NCBI GenBank assembly: GCA_963924565.1
Contig: OZ004610.1
Location: 11,160,001-11,224,000, forward strand
Length of the DNA: 64,000 nucleotides
Direction of reading: 5' to 3'
Source: Ascidiella aspersa
Taxonomy: Eukaryota
Numbering within the stretch: the stretch's first letter is position 1; every line of letters starts with the position of its first letter. The notes under the pieces were generated by a model, which was given only the letters and a program-made list of their open reading frames with translations, ran no database searches and was not told the origin of the DNA. A program made the translations under genes and the position numbers. This document shows positions 11,407 through 61,120 of this stretch, one piece after another.

Positions 11407-22005
<10,599 letters not shown>

Positions 22006-47337: not shown

Positions 47338-48135
47338 ATGATGGCCACAATAGCATCTAACAACAAGGAGATTTCATCTACAAAGGAAACAAAGTTCTTC
47401 AAACTGAGTGCAGATCATGACAATTCCAACACAATAGAGCAGCTGGTTGCTATCCTTCACCGGGGTGGCATTGTTGGCTTGCCAACTGACACAGTTTATG
47501 GAGTTGCTTGCTTAGCACAATGTACAGAAGCCGTTGAGAAGTTGTACAGTCTGAAAGCGAGAAACACCCTGAAACCAGTTGCCATTTGTGTTGGTGAATC
47601 CTTTGACATATTCCAGTGGACCAGATTTCCTCAGGGTTTGTACACTTCAGTTATCAATAAGTTGGGCGAAGATGAAACACGACCAAGATCTCCAAGCGTT
47701 GTGCAACAACTCCTGAATGACCTCTTGCCCGGCCCAGTGACAATTGTAACTGAAAGAGGACCAGGGTTAAACACAAATCTCAATCCAAAGACATCCTTGG
47801 TTGGAGTCAGAGTGCCAGACTATGAGTTTGTTAAGAGCTTGACCAACCGTTTAAGAGAGCCACTTGCTCTCACGTCTGCCAACATCAGTGGAGAAGAGAC
47901 GTCACTTTGCACAGAAGACTTTCGTTCTCTTTGGCCCATGCTTGACGCGGTTGTTGATGGCGGAGAGGTTGGAAAGAAATATGTGGACAAGCAACTAAAA
48001 TATGCCAGAGAAGGCTCAACTGTTGTCAGGATAATGGAAGATGGCGCTTCCTTCAAAGTTTTAAGGGCTGGATGTGCTTATGAGGATACTGTGAACACAT
48101 TGCAGATGAAGTGGGGTCTCAAGCTCATGGTGTAA
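47338..48135 (+). CDS. YRDC: Threonylcarbamoyl-AMP synthase (YrdC/Sua5/TsaC), 265 aa, single coding exon
   Basis: Motifs GGIVGLPTDTVYG, KAR..KP, LLPGPVT, VGVRVPD, PLALTSANISG, VVDGG, GSTVV, LRAG. Confidence 0.93.
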   Translation: MMATIASNNKEISSTKETKFFKLSADHDNSNTIEQLVAILHRGGIVGLPTDTVYGVACLAQCTEAVEKLYSLKARNTLKPVAICVGESFDIFQWTRFPQGLYTSVINKLGEDETRPRSPSVVQQLLNDLLPGPVTIVTERGPGLNTNLNPKTSLVGVRVPDYEFVKSLTNRLREPLALTSANISGEETSLCTEDFRSLWPMLDAVVDGGEVGKKYVDKQLKYAREGSTVVRIMEDGASFKVLRAGCAYEDTVNTLQMKWGLKLMV

Positions 48136-50712: not shown

Positions 50713-51631
50713 GTATTCGTCAAAAATGAAAAAGTGTACCTTGAATTGTTTTAAACTGTTTTTCTTTCATGTTTTATTTATATAGATACGAAAATACCAG
50801 TTAAAGCAAGCAACGCAAAGCACCAGATAACAACGCATTTGTGATACGTAGCAAAGGCTGATTGTCGTATGGCGACGCCTCCCTGTTAAATTGGCTGGCT
50901 TAATGAGCAACAACGGTAGGGCTCTATAAGCAATGGCAACCTCAGAATGCAATTGCGTGCGATTCGGTGTCGATTTATCGGGAAAAACAGAGGCAGAGCA
51001 TTAGCATTTGAGCGGAAGTGAGTTGCAGTTTCTATTTACTGATGCCTTGCGCAGTTGTAGACTCCGAAATCCCGCTAAACGCGTAGCAGCCTTATTATTT
51101 TCAGAAAAGTGCTCTAACCTGACAGACGCGTGTTACGCTTTACTGCAGTCCAAGTCTTAAGGTCAGTAATAAGAACTAGTGACCTCAGAAGTCTTGACTT
51201 GTTAAATTATTTAAATCAGTTGTTCTTACGAAAGGAGTTAAACCTTTGCGGTAAACCCCACCTAAATAATATATACTTAAGTGAATGACAACTACAGCAT
51301 ATAGACCTGTAATTTTTATTTATTAAAACTATGATTTAAACCCCTTACTCTGCAGTCCCACTATTACTATGGCCATTTGAAATTCAAACTTTCGGTTTAA
51401 CATATTATAAAGAAAAGTAAAAATAAAATATTGACAACAAGTTATTGGGATTAAACGAGAGAGAAAAAGTCAACATTTTCCCAAGTAGCGTTATCTTTTA
51501 TTTTGTATGTGGTGATCGGTTCGTGTACTGTGGAGTCAATCGGATTTGAAAAATCAACTCGGTCACAACACCATTTTGTTAAACTTGTATGTTGATCCAG
51601 AGCTTTTAACCAGGGCCAATATTGATTTCAG

Positions 51632-54600
51632 ATGCTAGGGCTAACTTCAGCTTACACGTGCTTCGCCTGTGCGCTTGTACTTTTATCGACCTTCCCCGGC
51701 GCACAAAGCACACCTCTCGACGTCGACGACCAAGGTGGGTGTTTTTTCGGCATTTTCAGAGGAGCGATCTGCGGTTTCGCTATCGTTCCGATCAAAACTG
51801 GGTCCGTTGTTGCTGACACGAATGGGTGATTCATAATTTGGGGCACGTCGCACGCGCGTTCAAGCGCAACCGACGTGGCGTGGGTGGGTAAAATTTAAAG
51901 CCGACCAATGAATCGGAATCATTTTTGACAAAAAATTATTATTCCGTGATTGAATCCTCAAATCAGCTCCGGCTAGTTTAATGTTCCTTACTCAATACGT
52001 AAAAGAAAACCTTAAAAAGTAACTTCACAGTGTAACGCTGTTTTTAATAGTATTGTCACTTATATCTGAATACTTACGTTTCTTAGTTTAATCAATATAT
52101 TAATTCTGCAACATTCTTGTTACACGTAAATTTGCTGATTTGCCAATTTTTGTCAGTCTATAAAATCAAACGCATTCGAGAAGCATTTCTTTTCCCCCGA
52201 AAACATTATGTATGGTGGCATACTAGACAAACCTGAATGTAAAATATTTGGATTTTGATTGAAAACGCGGCGACATGGATGTGACAGCGAGAGAAAACGT
52301 GACTTTTTTGTTTGTCTCGTCTTTTAGTCTATTAACGTTTTGCAACCACAACAAAAGGTAATGTTTTGTGATTAATCACGAGGTGGTACAACAATGTAAT
52401 TGGAGGATTTAAGCTTGATCAAACGTATCTTGTATATTTTTTAATCACAGCATTCGACTCGTGTATAAATTACATTTTATAACCTTTAATTTTTTTACTC
52501 GCTGATAATGTGGCGACATTTAACTAACCGGCTATTCAATACTTTGCGGATCATTTGCTCCCTAAACGATTTTACCCTTTGTTATTTTAACGTTTTATCT
52601 ATAAAATTTGTTTCACGGCATTCCACTATAGAACAGGGGTTCTTAAACTTTTTTACCGCGGACCCCTTAAATTTTCTTTGATCTCGCGTGGACCACTGCA
52701 GGCAAAAAAATTAACAAATGGCGTCATAAATTGACGTCATAGTATGAATAGACTTCATAAATTTGCTGATTTTGGTCCAAAAATATTAAAGTGAAATGAA
52801 GTATAAAAACATTCAGTTCAAAACCGTTTTATTTTTGATTGAATTATTTTCTTTAATAATCTGATTACTTATTCAATATACACTAATATTTTAATTATAC
52901 TTTCATGGACCCCCTAAAACTAGTTCACGGACCCCAAGGGTCCATAGACCCCAGTTTAAGAACTCCTGCTATAGAAGGTGTTGCCAACTTATGTTTGATT
53001 GCGATCCACTTACATATTTTTTAAAGACTCTCGATCGACTGGTTCGGTAAAAAAGTCACAAGAACACCTATTAAACATTTTGAGCGTTAATTGCATTTAA
53101 AATTTCCAAGCCAGTGATGGAGGTTAATTTGTTAGGTGAAATAACGCTTTGTTAGGCTTGTCCAAACAACAATTGGTCATTTTAATGTTCCGCTTGGGTG
53201 CGACAGCTACTTTATTGACGTAAAACATACCAACGCGTTCGAACGGGTGAAATGTGGCGATCGACCGGTCGATCGCCATCGACGTGTTGGCTACCCCTGC
53301 ACTATGATATTAATTTTCGTTGAGTTGCCCCTAAACTTTGCCACGAAACATTATATCAGACCCTTTTTTTCGAAGTTAAGTTTATATAACTTGTCAGAAC
53401 ATTATCGCTCGATGAAGCAGATTTTTTTTTAATAAAGGGTCAGTGGCGAATATTTTAAGGGCTATGATTTTTAATCTAAACAAAATATGGTATTCACCTG
53501 AATTGTATTAATTCTTAGGTATTTAGTCTTGTTTATACAATCAACTTTTGTTACTTTTGCGTAACTCCTATAATTTTGTTTCGTCGACAGCACATAAAAC
53601 CAGCAACGGAGCGTGCGTGACAAATTTCCGGGTGGCCAATGCGCGTTTGACCTTGTCGTGGGATCCACCGAAAGAATCTTCTTCAGAAACTGTGGACGGC
53701 TCGAAATTGCCTGCAAGCTACACCGTGCTTTACAAACTCGATTCGCCGCAGTAAGAAATTACGAATATTTTATATTGATTTTGATAAACATATTCGTTGT
53801 TTCCCTTAAACACAACATTATACAAGGAAAATTCACCAAGGTAATTCGAAAATTTTATGCCATTATTTCCGTTTAATTATTGGTTATTTGAAATTTAGCC
53901 TTTCAAGAAAAGCGTTAAACCTCTTGGTACGCGCAGTGTAAGAAAGGCGAAATAAGGAAACGCTGCGATACCAGGGTATATTAAGGTTTCTGGCATGATT
54001 TCTCACACGTTTATGACACCTTCTTTATACAAATAATTATTCGGAAATCACGCGGTTTCATAATATTTACCTGCGTGAGGCAGGGAAGATCAGCCATTTA
54101 AAACCGCCACGAATAGTTGTGCTTGCGAAAAGGGCTCATAAACAAACTTAACCAGCCTATGAACATATGTGTAACCAAAAGGTACAAGAAAACAATTAAA
54201 AACATACTGCACATCACGGTTACTGAATTATATATTATTTATGCTTCTTATCAGGAAAACAGTTTGTTTTCTGGTCGGAATACTCGCCTTTTCGTATAAG
54301 TCGATAAAAAATGTCGCATTGTAGTAAGACTGTTTCGCGACAGGGTTATCAAATAGAGCGCTTACTGAAAACAAATCCATTGTTGTCAAGTGCGTTTCGT
54401 TGTAACTCAACAGTTACCCGTATTGTTTCTGGTCGGCATACTCGCCTTTTTGTAAAATTCGTCCTTAACATATAGTTTAACATTTTTTAAAGTTATATAA
54501 ATCGCTGTTGCACCGTATTGCCCTTTTAAGTTCCTGGCTGAAGAGGGAAGCCGGACGCACAGTTAAAGTAATTAGGGAAGTGGATGTTTTTTATTTTACG

Positions 54601-57600
54601 ATCAACCCGCCACATCATTGCTACTAAACTGTTAGTTGTTTGCGTTTAAATAACACGCGTTGCTGCATCCTCGGGTAGATGTAAAGGCACAGAATTTTTC
54701 TATCTAAACTGTAGATTGTGCTTGGCTTTAACTTTAACGAAAAAACATGTAGCGTTCCTTAACTTTTGTTTCGTTTGAGATCAATATGTGTGGTCCAACA
54801 TTCGGTGATATATGTTACCATAAGAAGTTAAAAACTTCAAGTTAAAAATCACGAAAAAAGGTTTTACACCTTTGTTTTAAGGTTATATCCATCGCCTAAG
54901 TAGGTCCTGTAAAAGTAAACTTTTAGGGTGCGATTTTCAATTAACAAAGGCCTTGACCAAATAGGTTACGTCAAAGTTTCTTGTTGTTTCAATTTTACCA
55001 GGGCGATGAACCCATTTCGTATCTAATCTCACTGGCGGCAACAAATGATTACAGAAAACATTATTCCCTGACAAGTTACAATCCAACATCTTGTTCTAAA
55101 AAAAACGCAGCAATTGAAAACAAACTAAAAACTAAACTACCTTTGGTGTAAAAATGTCATTATTATTTATATCGCTTGATGCGTCGCAAGTCCACTAAAC
55201 TCTTCCAATAGCGTCTCCCGAAAAACCATGTGATCGGCAGCAGGGATTCGCTTAAAATCAGTTTTTTTTTGCAGAGCAGCGGCAGATGAATGGTACCCGG
55301 TGGAAGGCTGCGAGCGATCCACCTCCACAACATGCAACTTCCAAGCGTGGAAGATTGGACTGTGGCACACCTTCTTTCTCACAGTACAAACAACCTACGG
55401 CGGCGAAATTCTGCAATGCCCCGAGGTCCAACTACGCGTCCGTCCCATGGAGTACCGTGAGTTGCATACACACTTCTATCCCTATATGGTTGTGCTTTGA
55501 GAGATGTTTGCGACTTTACAGCTGTTTCGCTCCAGGTTTTCCTCGCTGGTCGCGGCCAGTGCAAAAGTGTATGCGATAATTCCAAGCTTGTGTGAGAAAG
55601 GACTCGTTTTTACATAGACCATGGTAGTAGATTTTTAAAGATTTTAGATTAAGATTTCAAATTAATTTGGGAACCATGGTATAAATGTGCGAAAATTTGG
55701 AATAAGAAATACATTGTTAGTTTCAAGTTAAGTGGTATAGTAAGCTGGTCATTTGTCGGTTGACGGTATTTTTCGTGTCCAATATTCTAAATAAAATTCC
55801 AGCAGACAGTAAAAAATGCCACCCAATTCCTTATTTGTATTGTGTCATATGTCTCAAGCTTCAAGTCGAAGCTTTATGGTATAAGAAAGAATAGCTAAGT
55901 AGTGTGTACCAGAGTCACGCAAAACAAACTGAAAAGTTTTTCGCCAGACTGTACGAGTTTCGCCTTCACCCTGTGCTCCCACCCTTAACAAACGACCGTG
56001 TGTTTACCCAGCCTGACCTCGTGTAGCATGTACGCTCGTCTGGCGGGGCCGGATACGCCGTAACAATTGCTGACAAGGTGTTATTCGTGCGCCTTTCTAC
56101 AGGGCTGCTTCCTACGCCGCAGTTCAACGTAACGTCGACGGCCAACAAGCTGTTCATCTACCCGCGGGCGGCCGACGAGACGGGCAATGGCAAATCCTAC
56201 ACGCGCACGCTCAAACAAATGTTGGAATTGAATTACCAGGTATTTCGCGCCGCGCACCACTATCGTGTTTTACAAGCGCCGCGTATCCGGCGCGCAGTCA
56301 GGATTTCGCTTTTCCAACCCGTCGCAACAGTCGTCATCGCAGGCTTTTTGCAGGCGTTAGGCGCTGCACATATGTACAGCTGCCAGACCGAGACGGCGCT
56401 GATTGCTCGCGGGTCCCGTTGCCGGCCTCCATTTGACTGGCGCTGGCGCGGCACATATGTCACGGTTTGTGTTACAGACAGGTGGTTCCTGACTGGCAGC
56501 GGTATCGCGACTAAAGCAGGATCTTTTGGCGCTCCGACCGCTGTCAGGCTTCCACGAAGGGCGGCGGATCAGCGGAGTCGACCCGAAAAGTTGCGCAACT
56601 CCGTACTTTGGGGTTCTTTCCTGCCTTCCTGACTCCCCACCCCCATGCTCGAACATGTCGGCTCGAGTTTTCTGTTGTCCGACGGCGTCGCCACAAACGC
56701 GCTCTGTCGAAGCCCACGATGCCACGTTTTGGATAAAAGCGATGAATTAATACAACACGCGTTTAGTTAGGTGATTTACCGTCGCGCGAGGTGACAATGC
56801 CATGACATTTTTTTCGGGTTACGCGTCCATGATTAATCAATAAAATGCGAGTTGTGTAAAACGGTGAATCGCACATTCAGTGACAGCATGGCATTTCTGA
56901 TTGTGTGTCGCTGCCGAAAATTGAACCATATTTACGGAAACACCACACAATGGCAAGCGCTCGGCGTCATTTCGCTATATGATTATATTTGTCTGTGTGT
57001 TTTTATCAAAAACTAAGATTATGCCTAAAAGAAAAAAACAATCTAAAAAACGCAGGCTATGTGTCGTTTTGTTGAAAATGACATGTTTCTACACCTTATG
57101 CAAAATTTGAAAGTGCTATACTTATTGTAATGTTTTTTATAATTTACTAACAGATTGATCCCCTGTCATACCTTATTTAGAAATAAACAGGATAAATAAA
57201 GCAAGGCATTTTTAAATGTACCAAATTTAAAGTCCAAAATTTGCACGTAAGCTAATCTTAATAATAAAAAAACAGCTCCTCTGGTAATTTTACCAACGTT
57301 TCGGCAACCTATGAAAGTCGCCTTCGTCAGGGTGTGAATGATACCGAACGCTCGTACAATGTATGGAATTTTTTAATTCAACAAAGTCTCATTACTGCTA
57401 CCAGGTTCAGTTTAACGCCACCGTTGAGAAACAGCACATCGAGAGCAAGGTGTTCGAGATACCGGCGGAGCGGTGCGGCGTCGTGGCAGCTGCAGAATCA
57501 ACCTGCTGTGTGCGACTGCGCATCGTCGAACCTAACTGGCAGGAGGTCACCTCCGATCCGTTTAGCGAGAGCAACTGGACAGCTTGGCAGTGCATTACCA

Positions 57601-60572
57601 TTAAGTCGATCGGTCCAGACAGGTGATACGCTTTCCGTTTTGTGTCTTTTATTTTGAAATAAATATTTTTACTATTATTTTTCCAACGTGGTGTCTCCTG
57701 AGGATTCGAGATTGATTTTGTACTCCTGTAATACGGCGACTTCGGGAAAAATTATTGATATGTGTGCCATAAATGGTTCAGATCGCAGATAACACATATA
57801 TCGAAATCTTTTAGGTAATACGGATTACAATAAGAGCTTAGGATTTTATTAGGGCAAAATAAGACGAAGCCAATAGTACACTATATACAATAATTTAACG
57901 TTCGTTGAAAACAAGTTTTACTTTGTCGATCGCTGTTTTGCTGACGAGTGTTTTTCAACAAGCACGAAAACAAGTTATAACCTCTACTATGAGTCAGATG
58001 TTTTAAACTGTGTCGGCCCATGTTTGGAAATGCATCCTAGAGATGTTGAGATGAACATTTAACCGCCAACAAAGTGCAAGCAAACAGTATGTCTTATCTA
58101 ATCGGATAATGAAATCAAATATAGTTGCTTCAAAAGTAAATATATCAATCTATAAAAAGATGTATTTTCGTGTGAATCAAAACATATGTTACTGAAGGAG
58201 ATACCAGCCGATCTCTTTAGATTATAAAATAAAAATAGTTTACGTCATGGTAAATCGCGGCAACTTGTGAACTGTTATGTAAATTTATTTCGCCCCCTAT
58301 TCTTAGAGTTGCATAAACTTGGTATTTTTTTCTTGCAGAAAACTTGTCACGGTGGCTGCTTTGGCTAGCGCCGTCAGCATTTGCGTTTTTCTGGTGAGCG
58401 GCTATGCGGCCTATCGACTTTACAACCTGTACCAGCACATGTACAAGGATCTGCCAAAATTACCGGAAACTTTGGTTAGTAATCGTTTAGTATTTTAAGG
58501 GTATACGGCATAATGCTATGTCAGGTATTTCAAATTATTTAGCTGCCAACTGGTCAATGCGTTTCGACATCATTACTGCGCGTACGGTTTGCAAGTTATT
58601 TAAATCTTGCTTTATTTTTGGTAATGCTAAATTATGGGTTAAAATATGTTTAGCCTATCTATAAATATCCGTTTTTACAAAAAATAAGACGTAGTTTAAT
58701 AAACGCTAAAACGAATTAGTTGATTTTAGTTTCCCACTGACCATTTGATTGTGCAGCACCAGCACCCGTAAAAGATAAACAAAGCGTTAGTTTGATTTAT
58801 ATTTACGGAGGTTTGCTAATCCAATACAAGCGAATTTCGCGAGAGTCCAATACATTCCGTTATATTTTTGGATGAAGTACAGGTGTCATCTCAAACCATA
58901 TAGGTGATTTGTGATTTTGATGATTAGTAGCGCTTAAATATTAGTGTTTTGCTAAATGCAAAAATTGTACAACTTCTGTGGCGAAAAATTTACTCGCTCG
59001 CCTACAACACGATTTTACAATATCCTGTGTCTTATGTATTGTATTACACCTTGGTGCTTCGAAAAAATGTAATGTAGCACTCATGGCAATTGAAAAGCAC
59101 CTGGCCAAAGCGACACGGGAAGCTCTCACGCTGAGCATTTATTTTGATGCAACTAAACGTTGAAAAGAATTGCGACCTTTGGCGCTAAGGTTCTACAGCA
59201 TTTTGCCCCAAAGTGTTATAGCGACAAACTTGAGTCTGTGTGCCACCGATTGACAAATCCTAATTGGTCACGGTACGCTACGGTCTTTAGACGAGGCGGT
59301 TTCGGATCAGTCGAAAAACAGAGGAACCGTGCGTGAGCAAATCGCACAAACGCGCGATTTGCACGCCAGTTAGCACTACAATTTCGTTTGTTTTTGTCAC
59401 GCTGTTTTCTTTTTGCGTAGAAACGTAGCAAAACAAGTACAACAGTTTGGATTTGTGCGTATAACGAATGCGCTGAGAACGAAGAAACATGGCATACTTT
59501 TTTTCCTTTTTTGAGTACCTAAATTACCCACTTGCTTAGCCGTGGCGTCAATCTGACGCCATTTGTAGCAATCTGAGAAGTTTCTGTCTAAATTTTAGCT
59601 ATAACTTTCAGCAGTTGAGGCCCTTTTTGTAGCAATCCTTGAGAAAAGCAACGTTGTCATTGAGTTGTAACGTTGCCATTTAGTTGCAACGTTGCCATTT
59701 ACTCAAGGCGCACGCCGCACGTATATAAGTGGCTAAGGTGTGACTTGCTTTTGATTTTCCCTAAACTTGACCTTATCGTCGGACAGGAAGAAACAATGCG
59801 CGACGACCGCACCATCCTATGTCAACAGCGCGATCAGTACTCAGACATCAACGTGAAAGAGAAGTACGACGTGGTGCCGCTGAGCTTTGCGCAACGCGGC
59901 GTCGAGCCTCGGACCCGACAGGAGTCGAACTCTACAACAGAAACGACGCTGGGAAGCGAAATCGCTGACGAAGATTCGCCTGCTGCGTGTGGCGCCGTGG
60001 AGGTGCACTGCGATCCCGAGATCGAGGGCGAGCCAGGATCGCACGACGAGAGTCCTATATACGTTACGATGGCCGCAGCCTTTGCTCAGTTGATGGCTAA
60101 GCGAAGAACAAGGCCGGATAGTTATGGTGGTGACGTGGACGCGGAGTCTGGGATTCTGGTCGACGGCGATCAAAGGCGGTCCTTTGAATCGGACGAGCAC
60201 GGCCCCTTTGCACACGAGGAGTGGCGCGAGCAGCCCGACTCGGGACTTTCACTGTGGCACAGCCGCTCGTCATCGTCCAACAACACCCTTACCGTCGAGA
60301 TTTGCGACGCGTCGCGGCTGAGCGTGCGCTGGTCGCCCAGCAACTCGGCGTCCGACGACGCTAGCTACACTACCAGCTTTGACCAATTCGACTCTGACTC
60401 GCGCCAACGCCTGTGCTCGGACTTAACCGAGGGTGGTGCCGGAGCGCTACCTACCAAGGACGACTGCGCTAGTTGCCGGGAAAAGTGCTTCCAAATCGGC
60501 GACAGCGTCTCGTATATTGCTTCGGACTTGATGGCGTCGAGCGCCACGTTGAAAGGTCCCGTTTTTACATGA
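51632..60572 (+). CDS. Class II cytokine receptor-like protein (interferon/IL-10 receptor family architecture), ~573 aa, 7 exons
   Basis: Exons: 51632-51734 (signal peptide, AQS|TP); 53591-53750 and 55275-55456 (FnIII D1: LTLSWDPP..YTVLY..W.PVEGCERSTSTTCNF..P); 56103-56239 and 57405-57622 (FnIII D2: LPTPQFNV..CVRLR..SNWTAWQC); 58339-58474 (TM LVTVAALASAVSICVFLVSGYAAY plus Box1-like PKLPETL); 59787-60572 (acidic Ser-rich tail with YSDI, YDVV, YVTM, YGGD, YTTS, YIAS). 1722 nt, in frame; intron phases 1-2-1-0-2-0. Confidence 0.82.
52634..52968. mobile_element. hAT (Charlie-like) MITE
   Basis: TIR CAGGGGTTCTTAAACT / AGTTTAAGAACTCCTG. Perfect TSD ctatagaa. Confidence 0.88.
52975..53299. mobile_element. 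Older hAT-like MITE (GATC-repeat type) whose left end was the target of the 52634 element
   Basis: Ends aaggtgttgccaac / gttggctacccctg; flanks cactatag / cactatga; cgatc motifs. Confidence 0.6.
57292..57333 (-). ncRNA. Minimal type I hammerhead ribozyme motif (Penelope-like element type), antisense in receptor intron 4
   Basis: The minus strand reads ACC-CTGACGA-A-GGCGAC-tttcatag-GTTGCC-GAAAC-GTT-GGT: intact core, 6-bp stem II, palindromic ACGT stem III, GUU cleavage triplet, 3-bp stem I. Confidence 0.6.
57938..57980 (+). ncRNA. Hammerhead-ribozyme-like motif, sense, in receptor intron 5
   Basis: TTG-CTGACGA-GTGTTT-ttcaac-AAGCAC-GAAA-acaagt-TA-TAA: the core and 6-bp stem II are intact, but stems I and III are very short and weak. 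Confidence 0.4.
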
Positions 60573-61120
60573 GCGCCTATATTTTAAAGAGCGTTTTCCT
60601 TGCGGTTGTGGACCGTTTTGTTCCCTCTCGGGTTTCACTGTACTTAAATACCATTATCTTGCCTATTGTAAAAAAACGGCTAAACAAGTTTATCATTCAT
60701 GTCTGAATTAAAACTGAACAGATTTAAACATTTTCAAACAAGATGTCAAACAAGGTGTTCTCGACTATTTGCCGAGGGTTGCTTTTATTGAGATTGCCCA
60801 ACATTGTGAATGTATAAAGTTCAGAACTGTGCTTTTTTGTCGTTGAACTGCCTGATTTAACGCCTATGCGAACACCGAAGTGCAATAAATTACTGATGCG
60901 GATTACGCAAATCGGTTTAAAAATTCTTGTGAACCGGGTGCATTTAATTATGCATTGACATTATTACGTCTCCAGACAGGCCTCTAAAGTCTTTAATCAA
61001 CCTTTTATGTCTGAACTTCATAAAAGACCCCATCCGTATTACAAGCTTGAAAGAACCTAAAGTAGCATTTGGTACAAGCCTTTTATAGGACCTGTTGCAA
61101 ACCTTGCACATTTAGCAGAG

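What the first reader, a model, noticed from the sequence alone, without database searches (positions are those of the whole stretch)
51632..60572. Complete interferon/IL-10-type (class II) cytokine receptor gene in an apparently invertebrate genome
Seen: seven exons splice in frame to a signal peptide, two FnIII domains (D1 W..C-x7-C pair, D2 S-x-W-x-x-W-x-C), a TM helix, a PxxL-containing Box1-like PKLPETL, and a ~260-aa acidic tail with six Tyr motifs including YVTM (YxxM). The ORF track shows only scattered fragments of it. Established: class II receptor genes split each FnIII over two exons with intron phases 1-2-1-0-1-0, and bind JAK through PxxL. Here five of the six phases match, with the pre-TM intron in phase 2. 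Recognisable interferon and IL-10 ligands are considered vertebrate innovations. Inference: this is a long-tailed R1-type chain of a pre-vertebrate JAK-STAT cytokine system whose ligand is unknown.
Basis: partly seen in the sequence, partly recalled or inferred. Interest (0 to 1): 0.88.

Follow-up and report, generated by a model that had tools for sequence, protein, structure and literature searches.

The report
Sea-squirt interferon-type (class II) cytokine receptor gene
This is an apparently intact seven-exon gene in a sea squirt for a membrane receptor of the interferon/IL-10 receptor family; such receptors were already noted in sea squirts and lancelets, so it is a new member of a known kind whose signalling partner molecule is still unknown.

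Summary
At 51632-60572 (+), seven exons with GT-AG introns splice in frame into a 573-aa type I membrane protein. It has a signal peptide, two FnIII-like domains each split over two exons, a TM helix, a juxtamembrane PKLPETL, and a 261-aa acidic last exon with six tyrosines. Intron phases are 1-2-1-0-2-0.

Class II membership is shown for domain 1 only. Exon 3 alone matches human IFNAR1 (PDB, E=8.9e-6). A profile of exon 3 with two paralogous exons from the same genome gives its ten best PDB matches to class II receptors (IFNAR1 6.6e-10, IL-10RB, IFNGR1, IL-20RA). Domain 2 rests on motifs, gene structure and similarity to the paralogues; exon-level searches had no power.

The host is an ascidian: the neighbouring YRDC gene is 71% identical to Phallusia, 69% to Ciona and at most 48% to vertebrates. 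The genome has three such receptor genes (C4, C1, C7), one JAK and at least two STAT loci.

A class II receptor in Ciona and amphioxus is already in the literature, and 2026 preprints report IFN ligands and CRFB receptors in lancelet and lamprey.

RNA support, the joined-protein Pfam scan and fold, and orthologues could not be tested.

The parts
51632..51734 (+). Exon 1: ATG and signal peptide (34 codons plus 1 base). The following intron is in phase 1.
   Evidence: Hydrophobic core FACALVLLSTF (KD 2.35), an AQS cleavage-type site, donor AAG|gtgggt.
53591..53750 (+). Exon 2: first half of FnIII domain 1 (..RLTLSWDPP..YTVLYK..). The following intron is in phase 2.
   Evidence: The PDB search gives only generic FnIII A/B-strand matches to titin. 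It aligns to the D1a exons of the paralogues through L..W..Y.
55275..55456 (+). Exon 3: second half of domain 1, carrying the class II signature W-x5-C-x7-C (WYPVEGCERSTSTTCNF). The following intron is in phase 1.
   Evidence: phmmer against PDB hits human IFNAR1 SD1 at E=8.9e-6. Pfam Tissue_fac 13.1 bits, E=0.087, profile positions 63-102 of 107; the paralogue profile hits IFNAR1, IL-10RB, IFNGR1 and IL-20RA.
56103..56239 (+). Exon 4: interdomain linker LLPTPQF and first half of FnIII domain 2, ending ..LELNYQ. The following intron is in phase 0.
   Evidence: It is 39% identical to the equivalent exon of the C1 paralogue, which has the same exon end ..LSYQ|gt. The shuffle z-score is 9.5, with 0 of 1000 shuffles reaching the observed score. 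No Pfam or PDB hit.
57405..57622 (+). Exon 5: second half of domain 2, with the Cys pair and the C-V-x-[LM]-R...S-x-W-x(3-4)-C motif shared by the paralogues (CVRLRIVE...SESNWTAWQC here). The following intron is in phase 2, where the family norm is 1.
   Evidence: Shuffle z-scores are 3.3 against C7 and 3.5 against C1, with 9 and 8 of 1000 shuffles reaching the observed score. No Pfam or PDB hit.
58339..58474 (+). Exon 6: transmembrane helix plus the juxtamembrane Box1-like segment YRLYNLYQHMYKDLPKLPETL. The following intron is in phase 0.
   Evidence: KD 2.44 over 19 residues. The C7 paralogue has YKARNVYRFYFRRDLKLPEKL at the same exon end. The shuffle z-score is 4.9, with 0 of 1000 reaching the observed score.
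59787..60572 (+). Exon 7: 261-aa acidic, Ser/Thr-rich cytoplasmic tail with six tyrosines, then the TGA stop.
   Evidence: No homologue among 1.84 billion representatives apart from one marginal hit in seven short stretches. No Pfam hit.

Best explanation
[quoted passage not shown] The protein is a type I membrane protein with an ectodomain of two FnIII domains, D1 from exons 2-3 and D2 from exons 4-5. Behind the membrane helix it has a PxxL (PETL) motif at Box1 distance, followed by a long, probably disordered acidic tail with six tyrosines. The most likely mechanism is inferred, not shown. A secreted helical cytokine, not yet recognised in tunicates, would bring this long chain together with a second chain, possibly one of the two paralogues on C1 or C7. 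The single ascidian JAK, pre-bound to the PxxL segment, would phosphorylate tail tyrosines, and these would recruit a STAT or other SH2 proteins. The gene model, the topology, the class II nature of D1, the paralogue family and the presence of JAK and STAT genes are shown. The class II nature of D2, JAK binding, STAT docking, expression and the ligand are inferred.
For: Gene model: seven open exons, GT-AG introns throughout, phases 1-2-1-0-2-0, and a clear exon/intron GC contrast. The canonical CRFB phase pattern 1-2-1-0-1 is quoted in bioRxiv 10.64898/2026.05.30.728932, and the C7 paralogue has 1-2-1-0-1-0. Domain 1: exon 3 alone hits human IFNAR1 SD1 at E=8.9e-6, with weaker stretches on IFNAR1 domain 3. 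The D1b profile of the three ascidian paralogues gives its ten best PDB matches to class II receptors: IFNAR1 6.6e-10, IL-10RB 0.0022, IFNGR1 0.017, IL-20RA 0.19; the only unrelated match is a mannosidase at E 0.35. Paralogue exons score 26.4-28.5 bits for Pfam Tissue_fac on half a domain (cut-off 27) and 27.6 bits in the genome scan. Exon-by-exon similarity to the paralogues exceeds shuffles: D2a z 9.5, D1b z 4.9, TM/Box1 z 4.9, D2b z 3.3-3.5. PMC5394478 states that the P and L of PxxLxF are conserved in all class II receptors. Here PETL lies about 17 residues after the TM and is conserved as PEKL in the C7 paralogue. The host genome has one JAK locus and at least two STAT loci. The host is an ascidian.
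Against: No RNA evidence could be obtained. No orthologue was found in any other species, so purifying selection is not shown. D2 has no Pfam or PDB match at exon level. Pfam Tissue_fac on exon 3 scores only 13.1 bits against a cut-off of 27. The Phe of PxxLxF is replaced by Glu. No YxxQ-type STAT3 motif is present. The pre-TM intron phase differs from the family norm. No IL-10 or interferon Pfam match exists in the genome, although that search has no power.
Confidence: 0.75

Rival explanations
1. It is a class II-fold receptor that does not signal through JAK-STAT. It could be a tissue-factor-like cofactor, an adhesion molecule or a decoy, and its long acidic tail would serve another purpose such as endocytosis or PI3K recruitment through YVTM.
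For: The tail has no detectable homologue. The PxxLxF Phe is missing. YVTM fits a p85 SH2 consensus (YxxM, from my own knowledge) rather than a known STAT site. The N-terminal part of the tail is not significantly similar between paralogues.
Against: The PxxL segment is conserved at the same exon end in the C7 paralogue (z 4.9). Tissue factor has a very short tail (my own knowledge), whereas this one is about 280 aa. JAK and STAT genes are present.
Confidence: 0.15
2. It is a silent or decaying gene copy: a gene model that looks intact but is not expressed.
For: The gene is the most divergent of the three paralogues against Pfam (13 bits against 26-28). The pre-TM intron phase is unusual.
Against: A 573-codon frame is kept open across seven exons with all twelve splice dinucleotides canonical. 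Exon GC is raised over intron GC. The structural Cys and Trp residues are conserved.
Confidence: 0.07
3. It is a class I (gp130/Domeless-type) or other FnIII receptor that was mistaken for class II.
For: Exon 2 matches only generic FnIII domains of titin. D2 has no family-specific hit. SESNWTAW lies where class I receptors carry WSXWS.
Against: Exon 3 and the paralogue profile give their significant PDB matches only to class II receptors. The class I Cys pattern CX(9-10)CXW quoted in PMC1963337 is absent. The W motif is followed directly by the D2 Cys in all three paralogues. Five of six intron phases fit the class II pattern.
Confidence: 0.03

Closest known systems
Ciona intestinalis 'apparent class II cytokine receptor' (GI 198428337; Krause & Pestka 2005, as cited in PMC3210801 and PMC2248247)
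   Same: It is a tunicate class II-type receptor with no known ligand, from the same animal group. The host's YRDC is 69% identical to Ciona's.
   Different: I could not fetch the Ciona protein, so orthology is untested. The literature cited speaks of one apparent receptor in Ciona, whereas this genome has three detectable paralogues.
Human IFNAR1, subdomains SD1 and SD3 (PDB 3s98, 3se3, 8y31; mouse 3wcy)
   Same: This is the best sequence match of exon 3. WYPVEGCERSTSTTCNF aligns with WIKLSGCQNITSTKCNF, including the C-x7-C disulfide pair.
   Different: IFNAR1 has four FnIII domains and this protein has two. Only about 36 residues align, and no orthology is implied.
Vertebrate long 'R1' chains IL10RA and IFNLR1, which bind JAK1 through Box1 PxxLxF (PMC5394478)
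   Same: Two FnIII domains, a long intracellular tail, and a PxxL motif about 15-17 residues after the TM.
   Different: The Phe of the motif is Glu here. No Box2 could be shown. There is no sequence similarity in the tail, and JAK binding is untested.
Amphioxus BjCRFB1/BjCRFB2 and lamprey CRFB7/CRFB14 (bioRxiv 10.64898/2026.08.17.745176 and 10.64898/2026.05.30.728932)
   Same: They are class II receptors from a non-vertebrate chordate or a jawless vertebrate, with a signal peptide, FnIII domains and a TM. The lamprey genes show the 1-2-1-0-1 phase array.
   Different: Those receptors have reported IFN ligands and functional assays. BjCRFB1 and BjCRFB2 have four and three FnIII domains. The first preprint found no IFN-like fold in the tunicate Styela clava.

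Membership tests
Class II cytokine receptor (CRF2/CRFB) | Type I membrane topology: signal peptide, ectodomain, single TM helix, cytoplasmic tail | tested here: met
   The signal-peptide core scores KD 2.35 and the 19-residue TM scores KD 2.44. N-glycosylation sequons (NVT, NAT, NWT) occur in exons 4 and 5.
Class II cytokine receptor (CRF2/CRFB) | D1 of Tissue_fac type with a conserved Trp and a C-x7-C disulfide pair | tested here: met
   Exon 3 against PDB hits IFNAR1 at E=8.9e-6. The three-paralogue profile gives its ten best PDB matches to class II receptors, best 6.6e-10.
Class II cytokine receptor (CRF2/CRFB) | Pfam PF01108 Tissue_fac above the gathering score (27 bits) | tested here: inconclusive
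   Only half-domains could be scanned, because exons were searched singly. Exon 3 scores 13.1 bits, E=0.087, and exon 2 gives no hit. Paralogue half-domains reach 26.4 and 28.5 bits.
Class II cytokine receptor (CRF2/CRFB) | D2 of Interfer-bind type (PF09294) with its own Cys pair | tested here: inconclusive
   No Pfam or PDB hit for exons 4 or 5 or their profiles. The paralogues give none either, so the test has no power. The Cys pair and the S-x-W...C motif are present and shared with the paralogues.
Class II cytokine receptor (CRF2/CRFB) | Each FnIII domain split over two exons, intron phases 1-2-1-0-1(-0) | tested here: met
   Five of six phases match, and the pre-TM intron is in phase 2. 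The C7 paralogue has 1-2-1-0-1-0. The reference pattern is quoted.
Class II cytokine receptor (CRF2/CRFB) | Box1 PxxL(xF) in the juxtamembrane region | tested here: met
   PETL is present, with P and L conserved, and appears as PEKL in the C7 paralogue. The favoured Phe is Glu. The criterion comes from PMC5394478.
Class II cytokine receptor (CRF2/CRFB) | Binds a class II helical cytokine and activates JAK-STAT | not testable with these tools
   JAK and STAT loci exist in the genome. Scans with the IL10 and Interferon Pfam models found nothing, but those scans have no power.
Class I cytokine receptor | CX(9-10)CXW Cys pattern in D1 and WSXWS in D2 (PMC1963337) | tested here: not met
   Read from the exon translations. 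D1 has C-x7-C after the Trp. D2 has SESNWTAWQC and no WSXWS.
Tissue factor (F3) | Class II fold with a very short cytoplasmic tail | tested here: not met
   The cytoplasmic part is about 280 aa: the end of exon 6 plus the 261 aa of exon 7. The short tail of tissue factor is from my own knowledge.

The most novel reading that the evidence does not exclude
Tunicates may have kept a working class II cytokine system with at least three receptor chains. Two of them are long-tailed and share a KLPExL Box1-like motif. The ligand would be so diverged that the 2026 structure screen of Styela clava missed it. In that case this gene would be the ligand-binding long chain of an orphan interferon/IL-10-like pathway in the sister group of vertebrates.
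Probability: 0.35. Interest if true: 0.6.

Novelty: new member of a known kind. Interest (0 to 1): 0.4.

Why it matters
Tunicates are the closest living relatives of vertebrates. In 2026, interferon-like ligands and CRFB receptors were reported for lancelet and lamprey, but the same study found no such ligand in a tunicate. An intact, long-tailed class II receptor with a conserved JAK-type docking motif is therefore a useful lead, especially as one of three paralogues in a genome that also has JAK and STAT. It suggests the pathway was not lost in tunicates, and it offers concrete bait, the ectodomain, for finding the missing ligand. It does not overturn anything, because class II receptors in Ciona have been mentioned since 2005.

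Tried and rejected
- **Tail searches.**
  - The exon 7 tail against 1.84 billion representatives gave one marginal hit in seven short stretches.
  - The C7 paralogue tail gave nothing in the search for homologous proteins.
  - Exon 3 gave no shared words in the search for homologous proteins.
  - Full-length tunicate relatives could not be reached, because the length filter excludes them for exon-sized queries.
- **Domain 2.** D2 exons and D2 profiles against Pfam and PDB gave nothing. The ESM Atlas search on exon 5 returned only low-score, unrelated clusters.
- **Box1 exon.** Exon 6 against PDB gave nothing.
- **Box2 idea.** I considered a shared Box2 (window KEKYDVVPLSF against C7 SEYEIGVSLPF). 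I rejected it as evidence because the tail N-termini are no more alike than shuffles (z -0.4).
- **PF09294 hits.** The hits on C8 (L003-L006, L008, L010) and C5 (L011) are ordinary fn3 domains, not class II receptors. The hit on C2 (L007) is ambiguous and is listed under things noticed.
- **Repeats and RNA families.** The GC-rich block in intron 4 is not a repeat, being single-copy. The locus has no Rfam family.
- **Joined-exon step.** Every search was done exon by exon, by reference.

Full report
**Observation**

I read 51400-54000, 55100-55620 and 55600-60800 directly and recomputed the model by script.
- Seven + strand exons join in one frame: 51632-51734, 53591-53750, 55275-55456, 56103-56239, 57405-57622, 58339-58474 and 59787-60572.
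- All six introns are GT...AG with pyrimidine-rich acceptors.
- Intron phases are 1, 2, 1, 0, 2, 0. The CDS is 1722 nt, giving 573 aa.
- Exon GC is 0.49-0.59 and intron GC is 0.33-0.46.
  - a signal peptide;
  - W-x5-C-x7-C in exon 3;
  - SESNWTAWQC in exon 5;
  - a 19-residue TM core with mean hydropathy 2.44;
  - PKLPETL at the end of exon 6;
  - a 261-aa last exon with 49 acidic and 24 basic residues and six tyrosines, YVTM among them.

**Host**

Earlier scan notes called this genome "probably ascidian", and I tested that.
- The single-exon YRDC gene at 47338-48135 of the window is 71% identical to Phallusia mammillata, 69% to Ciona intestinalis, 66% to Clavelina lepadiformis and 56% to Styela clava.
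- It is at most 48% identical to any vertebrate.
- The host is therefore an ascidian, nearer to the Phallusia/Ciona side than to Styela, and is none of the species in the protein collection.

**What the gene is**

Every test was done exon by exon and by reference, which limits power because each FnIII domain is split over two exons.

Domain 1 gave clear results.
- Pfam on single exons gave only Tissue_fac on exon 3, at 13.1 bits and E=0.087, against profile positions 63-102 of 107.
- A PDB sequence search was clearer. Exon 3 alone hits human IFNAR1 subdomain 1 at E=8.9e-6, aligning WYPVEGCERSTSTTCNF with WIKLSGCQNITSTKCNF. Weaker stretches fall on the equivalent part of IFNAR1 domain 3.
- Exon 2 matches only generic FnIII A/B strands of titin.

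Domain 2 gave nothing at exon level.
- Exons 4, 5 and 6 have no PDB or Pfam match.

**Paralogues**

Scanning the host genome with PF01108 found two other loci, at C7:10.318 Mb and C1:16.248 Mb. I fetched them and modelled their exons.
- Both are class II-type receptor genes.
- The C7 gene has the canonical phases 1-2-1-0-1-0, a Box1-like ..DLKLPEKL at the end of its TM exon, and a tail of about 450 aa.
- In the C1 gene, the D2a exon ends ..LSYQ|gt, exactly like the window's ..LNYQ|gt.
- Half-domain exons of these paralogues reach 26.4 and 28.5 bits for Tissue_fac.

Exon-by-exon local alignments of the window gene to the paralogues exceed 1000 residue shuffles.

| Exon pair | z-score | Shuffles reaching the observed score |
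|---|---|---|
| D2a, window vs C1 | 9.5 | 0 of 1000 |
| D1b, window vs C7 | 4.9 | 0 of 1000 |
| D1b, window vs C1 | 3.7 | 3 of 1000 |
| TM/Box1, window vs C7 | 4.9 | 0 of 1000 |
| D2b, window vs C7 | 3.3 | 9 of 1000 |
| D2b, window vs C1 | 3.5 | 8 of 1000 |

- A profile of the three D1b exons (A1) gives its ten best PDB matches to class II cytokine receptors: IFNAR1 at 6.6e-10, IL-10RB at 0.0022, IFNGR1 at 0.017 and IL-20RA at 0.19. The only unrelated match is a mannosidase at E 0.35.
- The same profile finds just these three loci in the host genome.
- The window exons have no closer copies elsewhere in the genome.
- The PF09294 hits on C8 (L003-L006, L008, L010) and C5 (L011) are ordinary fn3 domains.

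Domain 1 is therefore class II on direct evidence. Domain 2 is class II by position, gene structure, its Cys pair, the C-V-x-[LM]-R...S-x-W-x(3-4)-C motif shared by the three paralogues and similarity to the paralogues, but not by any family model. The paralogues' own D2 exons also fail, so that test has no power.

**Mechanism**

- PMC5394478 states that class II receptors bind the JAK1 FERM F2 lobe through Box1 PxxLxF. It says P and L are conserved in all class II receptors and that Phe is merely favoured.
- Here PETL sits about 17 residues after the TM. It is kept as PEKL in the C7 paralogue at the identical exon end. The Phe position is Glu.
- The host genome has one JAK locus, at C4:504977 with Jak1_Phl at 45.8 bits. 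It has STAT_bind hits above the cut-off at two loci, C5:16.32 Mb and C6:13.89 Mb, and a third, weaker hit at C6:14.01 Mb.
- The most likely mechanism is ligand-driven pairing of this long chain with a second chain, then JAK trans-activation and phosphorylation of tail tyrosines. All of that is inference.
- I considered a shared Box2 and dropped it, because the tail N-termini are not significantly alike.
- Pfam IL10 and Interferon scans of the genome were blank, but the tool itself warns that this shows nothing.

**Comparison with what is known**

- PMC2248247 mentions distant homologues of type I IFN receptors among Ciona haemocyte ESTs.
- bioRxiv 10.64898/2026.05.30.728932 reports IFN homologues and CRFB receptors in lamprey and lancelet, with the 1-2-1-0-1 phase array. 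It found no IFN-like fold in Styela clava.
- bioRxiv 10.64898/2026.08.17.745176 describes amphioxus BjCRFB1 and BjCRFB2.

A tunicate class II receptor is thus a known kind, and this gene is a new member of it. The modest additions here are:
- three paralogues in one ascidian;
- a Box1-like KLPExL shared by the two long-tailed chains;
- a phase-2 pre-TM intron in this gene.

I could not read Krause & Pestka 2005 itself.

**Not tested**

- Pfam, AlphaFold and Foldseek on the joined protein: left out by rule.

**Verdict**

This is a real-looking, intact ascidian class II cytokine receptor gene. Novelty is modest and I score interest at about 0.4.

Noticed in passing
window 56240-56750 (inside intron 4): A GC-rich block of about 500 bp (GC 0.57-0.61) sits in an intron whose remainder has GC 0.28-0.47. 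The exon 4 reading frame stays open through it for 131 more codons, to 56632. It is single-copy in the genome and has no Rfam match. It is unexplained; it could be an internal regulatory island or an alternative exon extension.
   Followed up: partly
window 57621-57663: The exon 5 donor reads AG|GTGA. If intron 5 were retained, the frame would end at once (..D R stop) just before the TM exon. An AATAAA lies at 57658-57663. This fits the separate first-stage note s1-791092 on a possible soluble isoform. No RNA evidence was available.
   Followed up: partly
G000:C7:10312700-10318420 (L016, L001), minus strand: A paralogous class II receptor gene with canonical phases 1-2-1-0-1-0, the Box1-like motif DLKLPEKL and a cytoplasmic tail of about 450 aa. 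Its D1a exon scores 26.4 bits for Tissue_fac as the trimmed exon (27.6 in the genome scan; cut-off 27).
   Followed up: partly
G000:C1:16246500-16249000 (L017, L002), minus strand: A third class II receptor paralogue. Its D1b exon scores 28.5 bits for Tissue_fac. Its D2a exon is 39% identical to window exon 4. Its D2b and TM appear to lie in one exon, and its tail is shorter, under 200 aa. The gene model is only partly worked out.
   Followed up: partly
L016 9694-9855 (minus strand; C7 paralogue, intron between D1a and D1b): An open frame here encodes a hydrophobic stretch followed by ..KKLPKLRNIL, which recalls the TM/Box1 exon. The similarity is not significant (tblastn E about 0.5). It may be chance or a decayed duplicated exon.
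   Followed up: no
G000:C4:504977-505204: The only JAK-type (Jak1_Phl) match in the genome lies in a 1034-aa open frame, which suggests a JAK gene with very large exons. It is on the same chromosome as this receptor, about 10.7 Mb away.
   Followed up: no
window 17408-18726 (minus strand) and 47338-48135 (+): Neighbouring genes: exons of a Src-family-like tyrosine kinase (..[19 protein letters not shown]..) and a single-exon YRDC/threonylcarbamoyl-AMP synthase gene. I used the YRDC gene to place the host among ascidians.
   Followed up: partly
G000:C2:15164387-15166122 (L007): Two exon-sized matches score better for Interfer-bind than for generic fn3 (24.0 against 19.8 bits). This may be another cytokine-receptor-like gene of class I or class II.
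   Followed up: no
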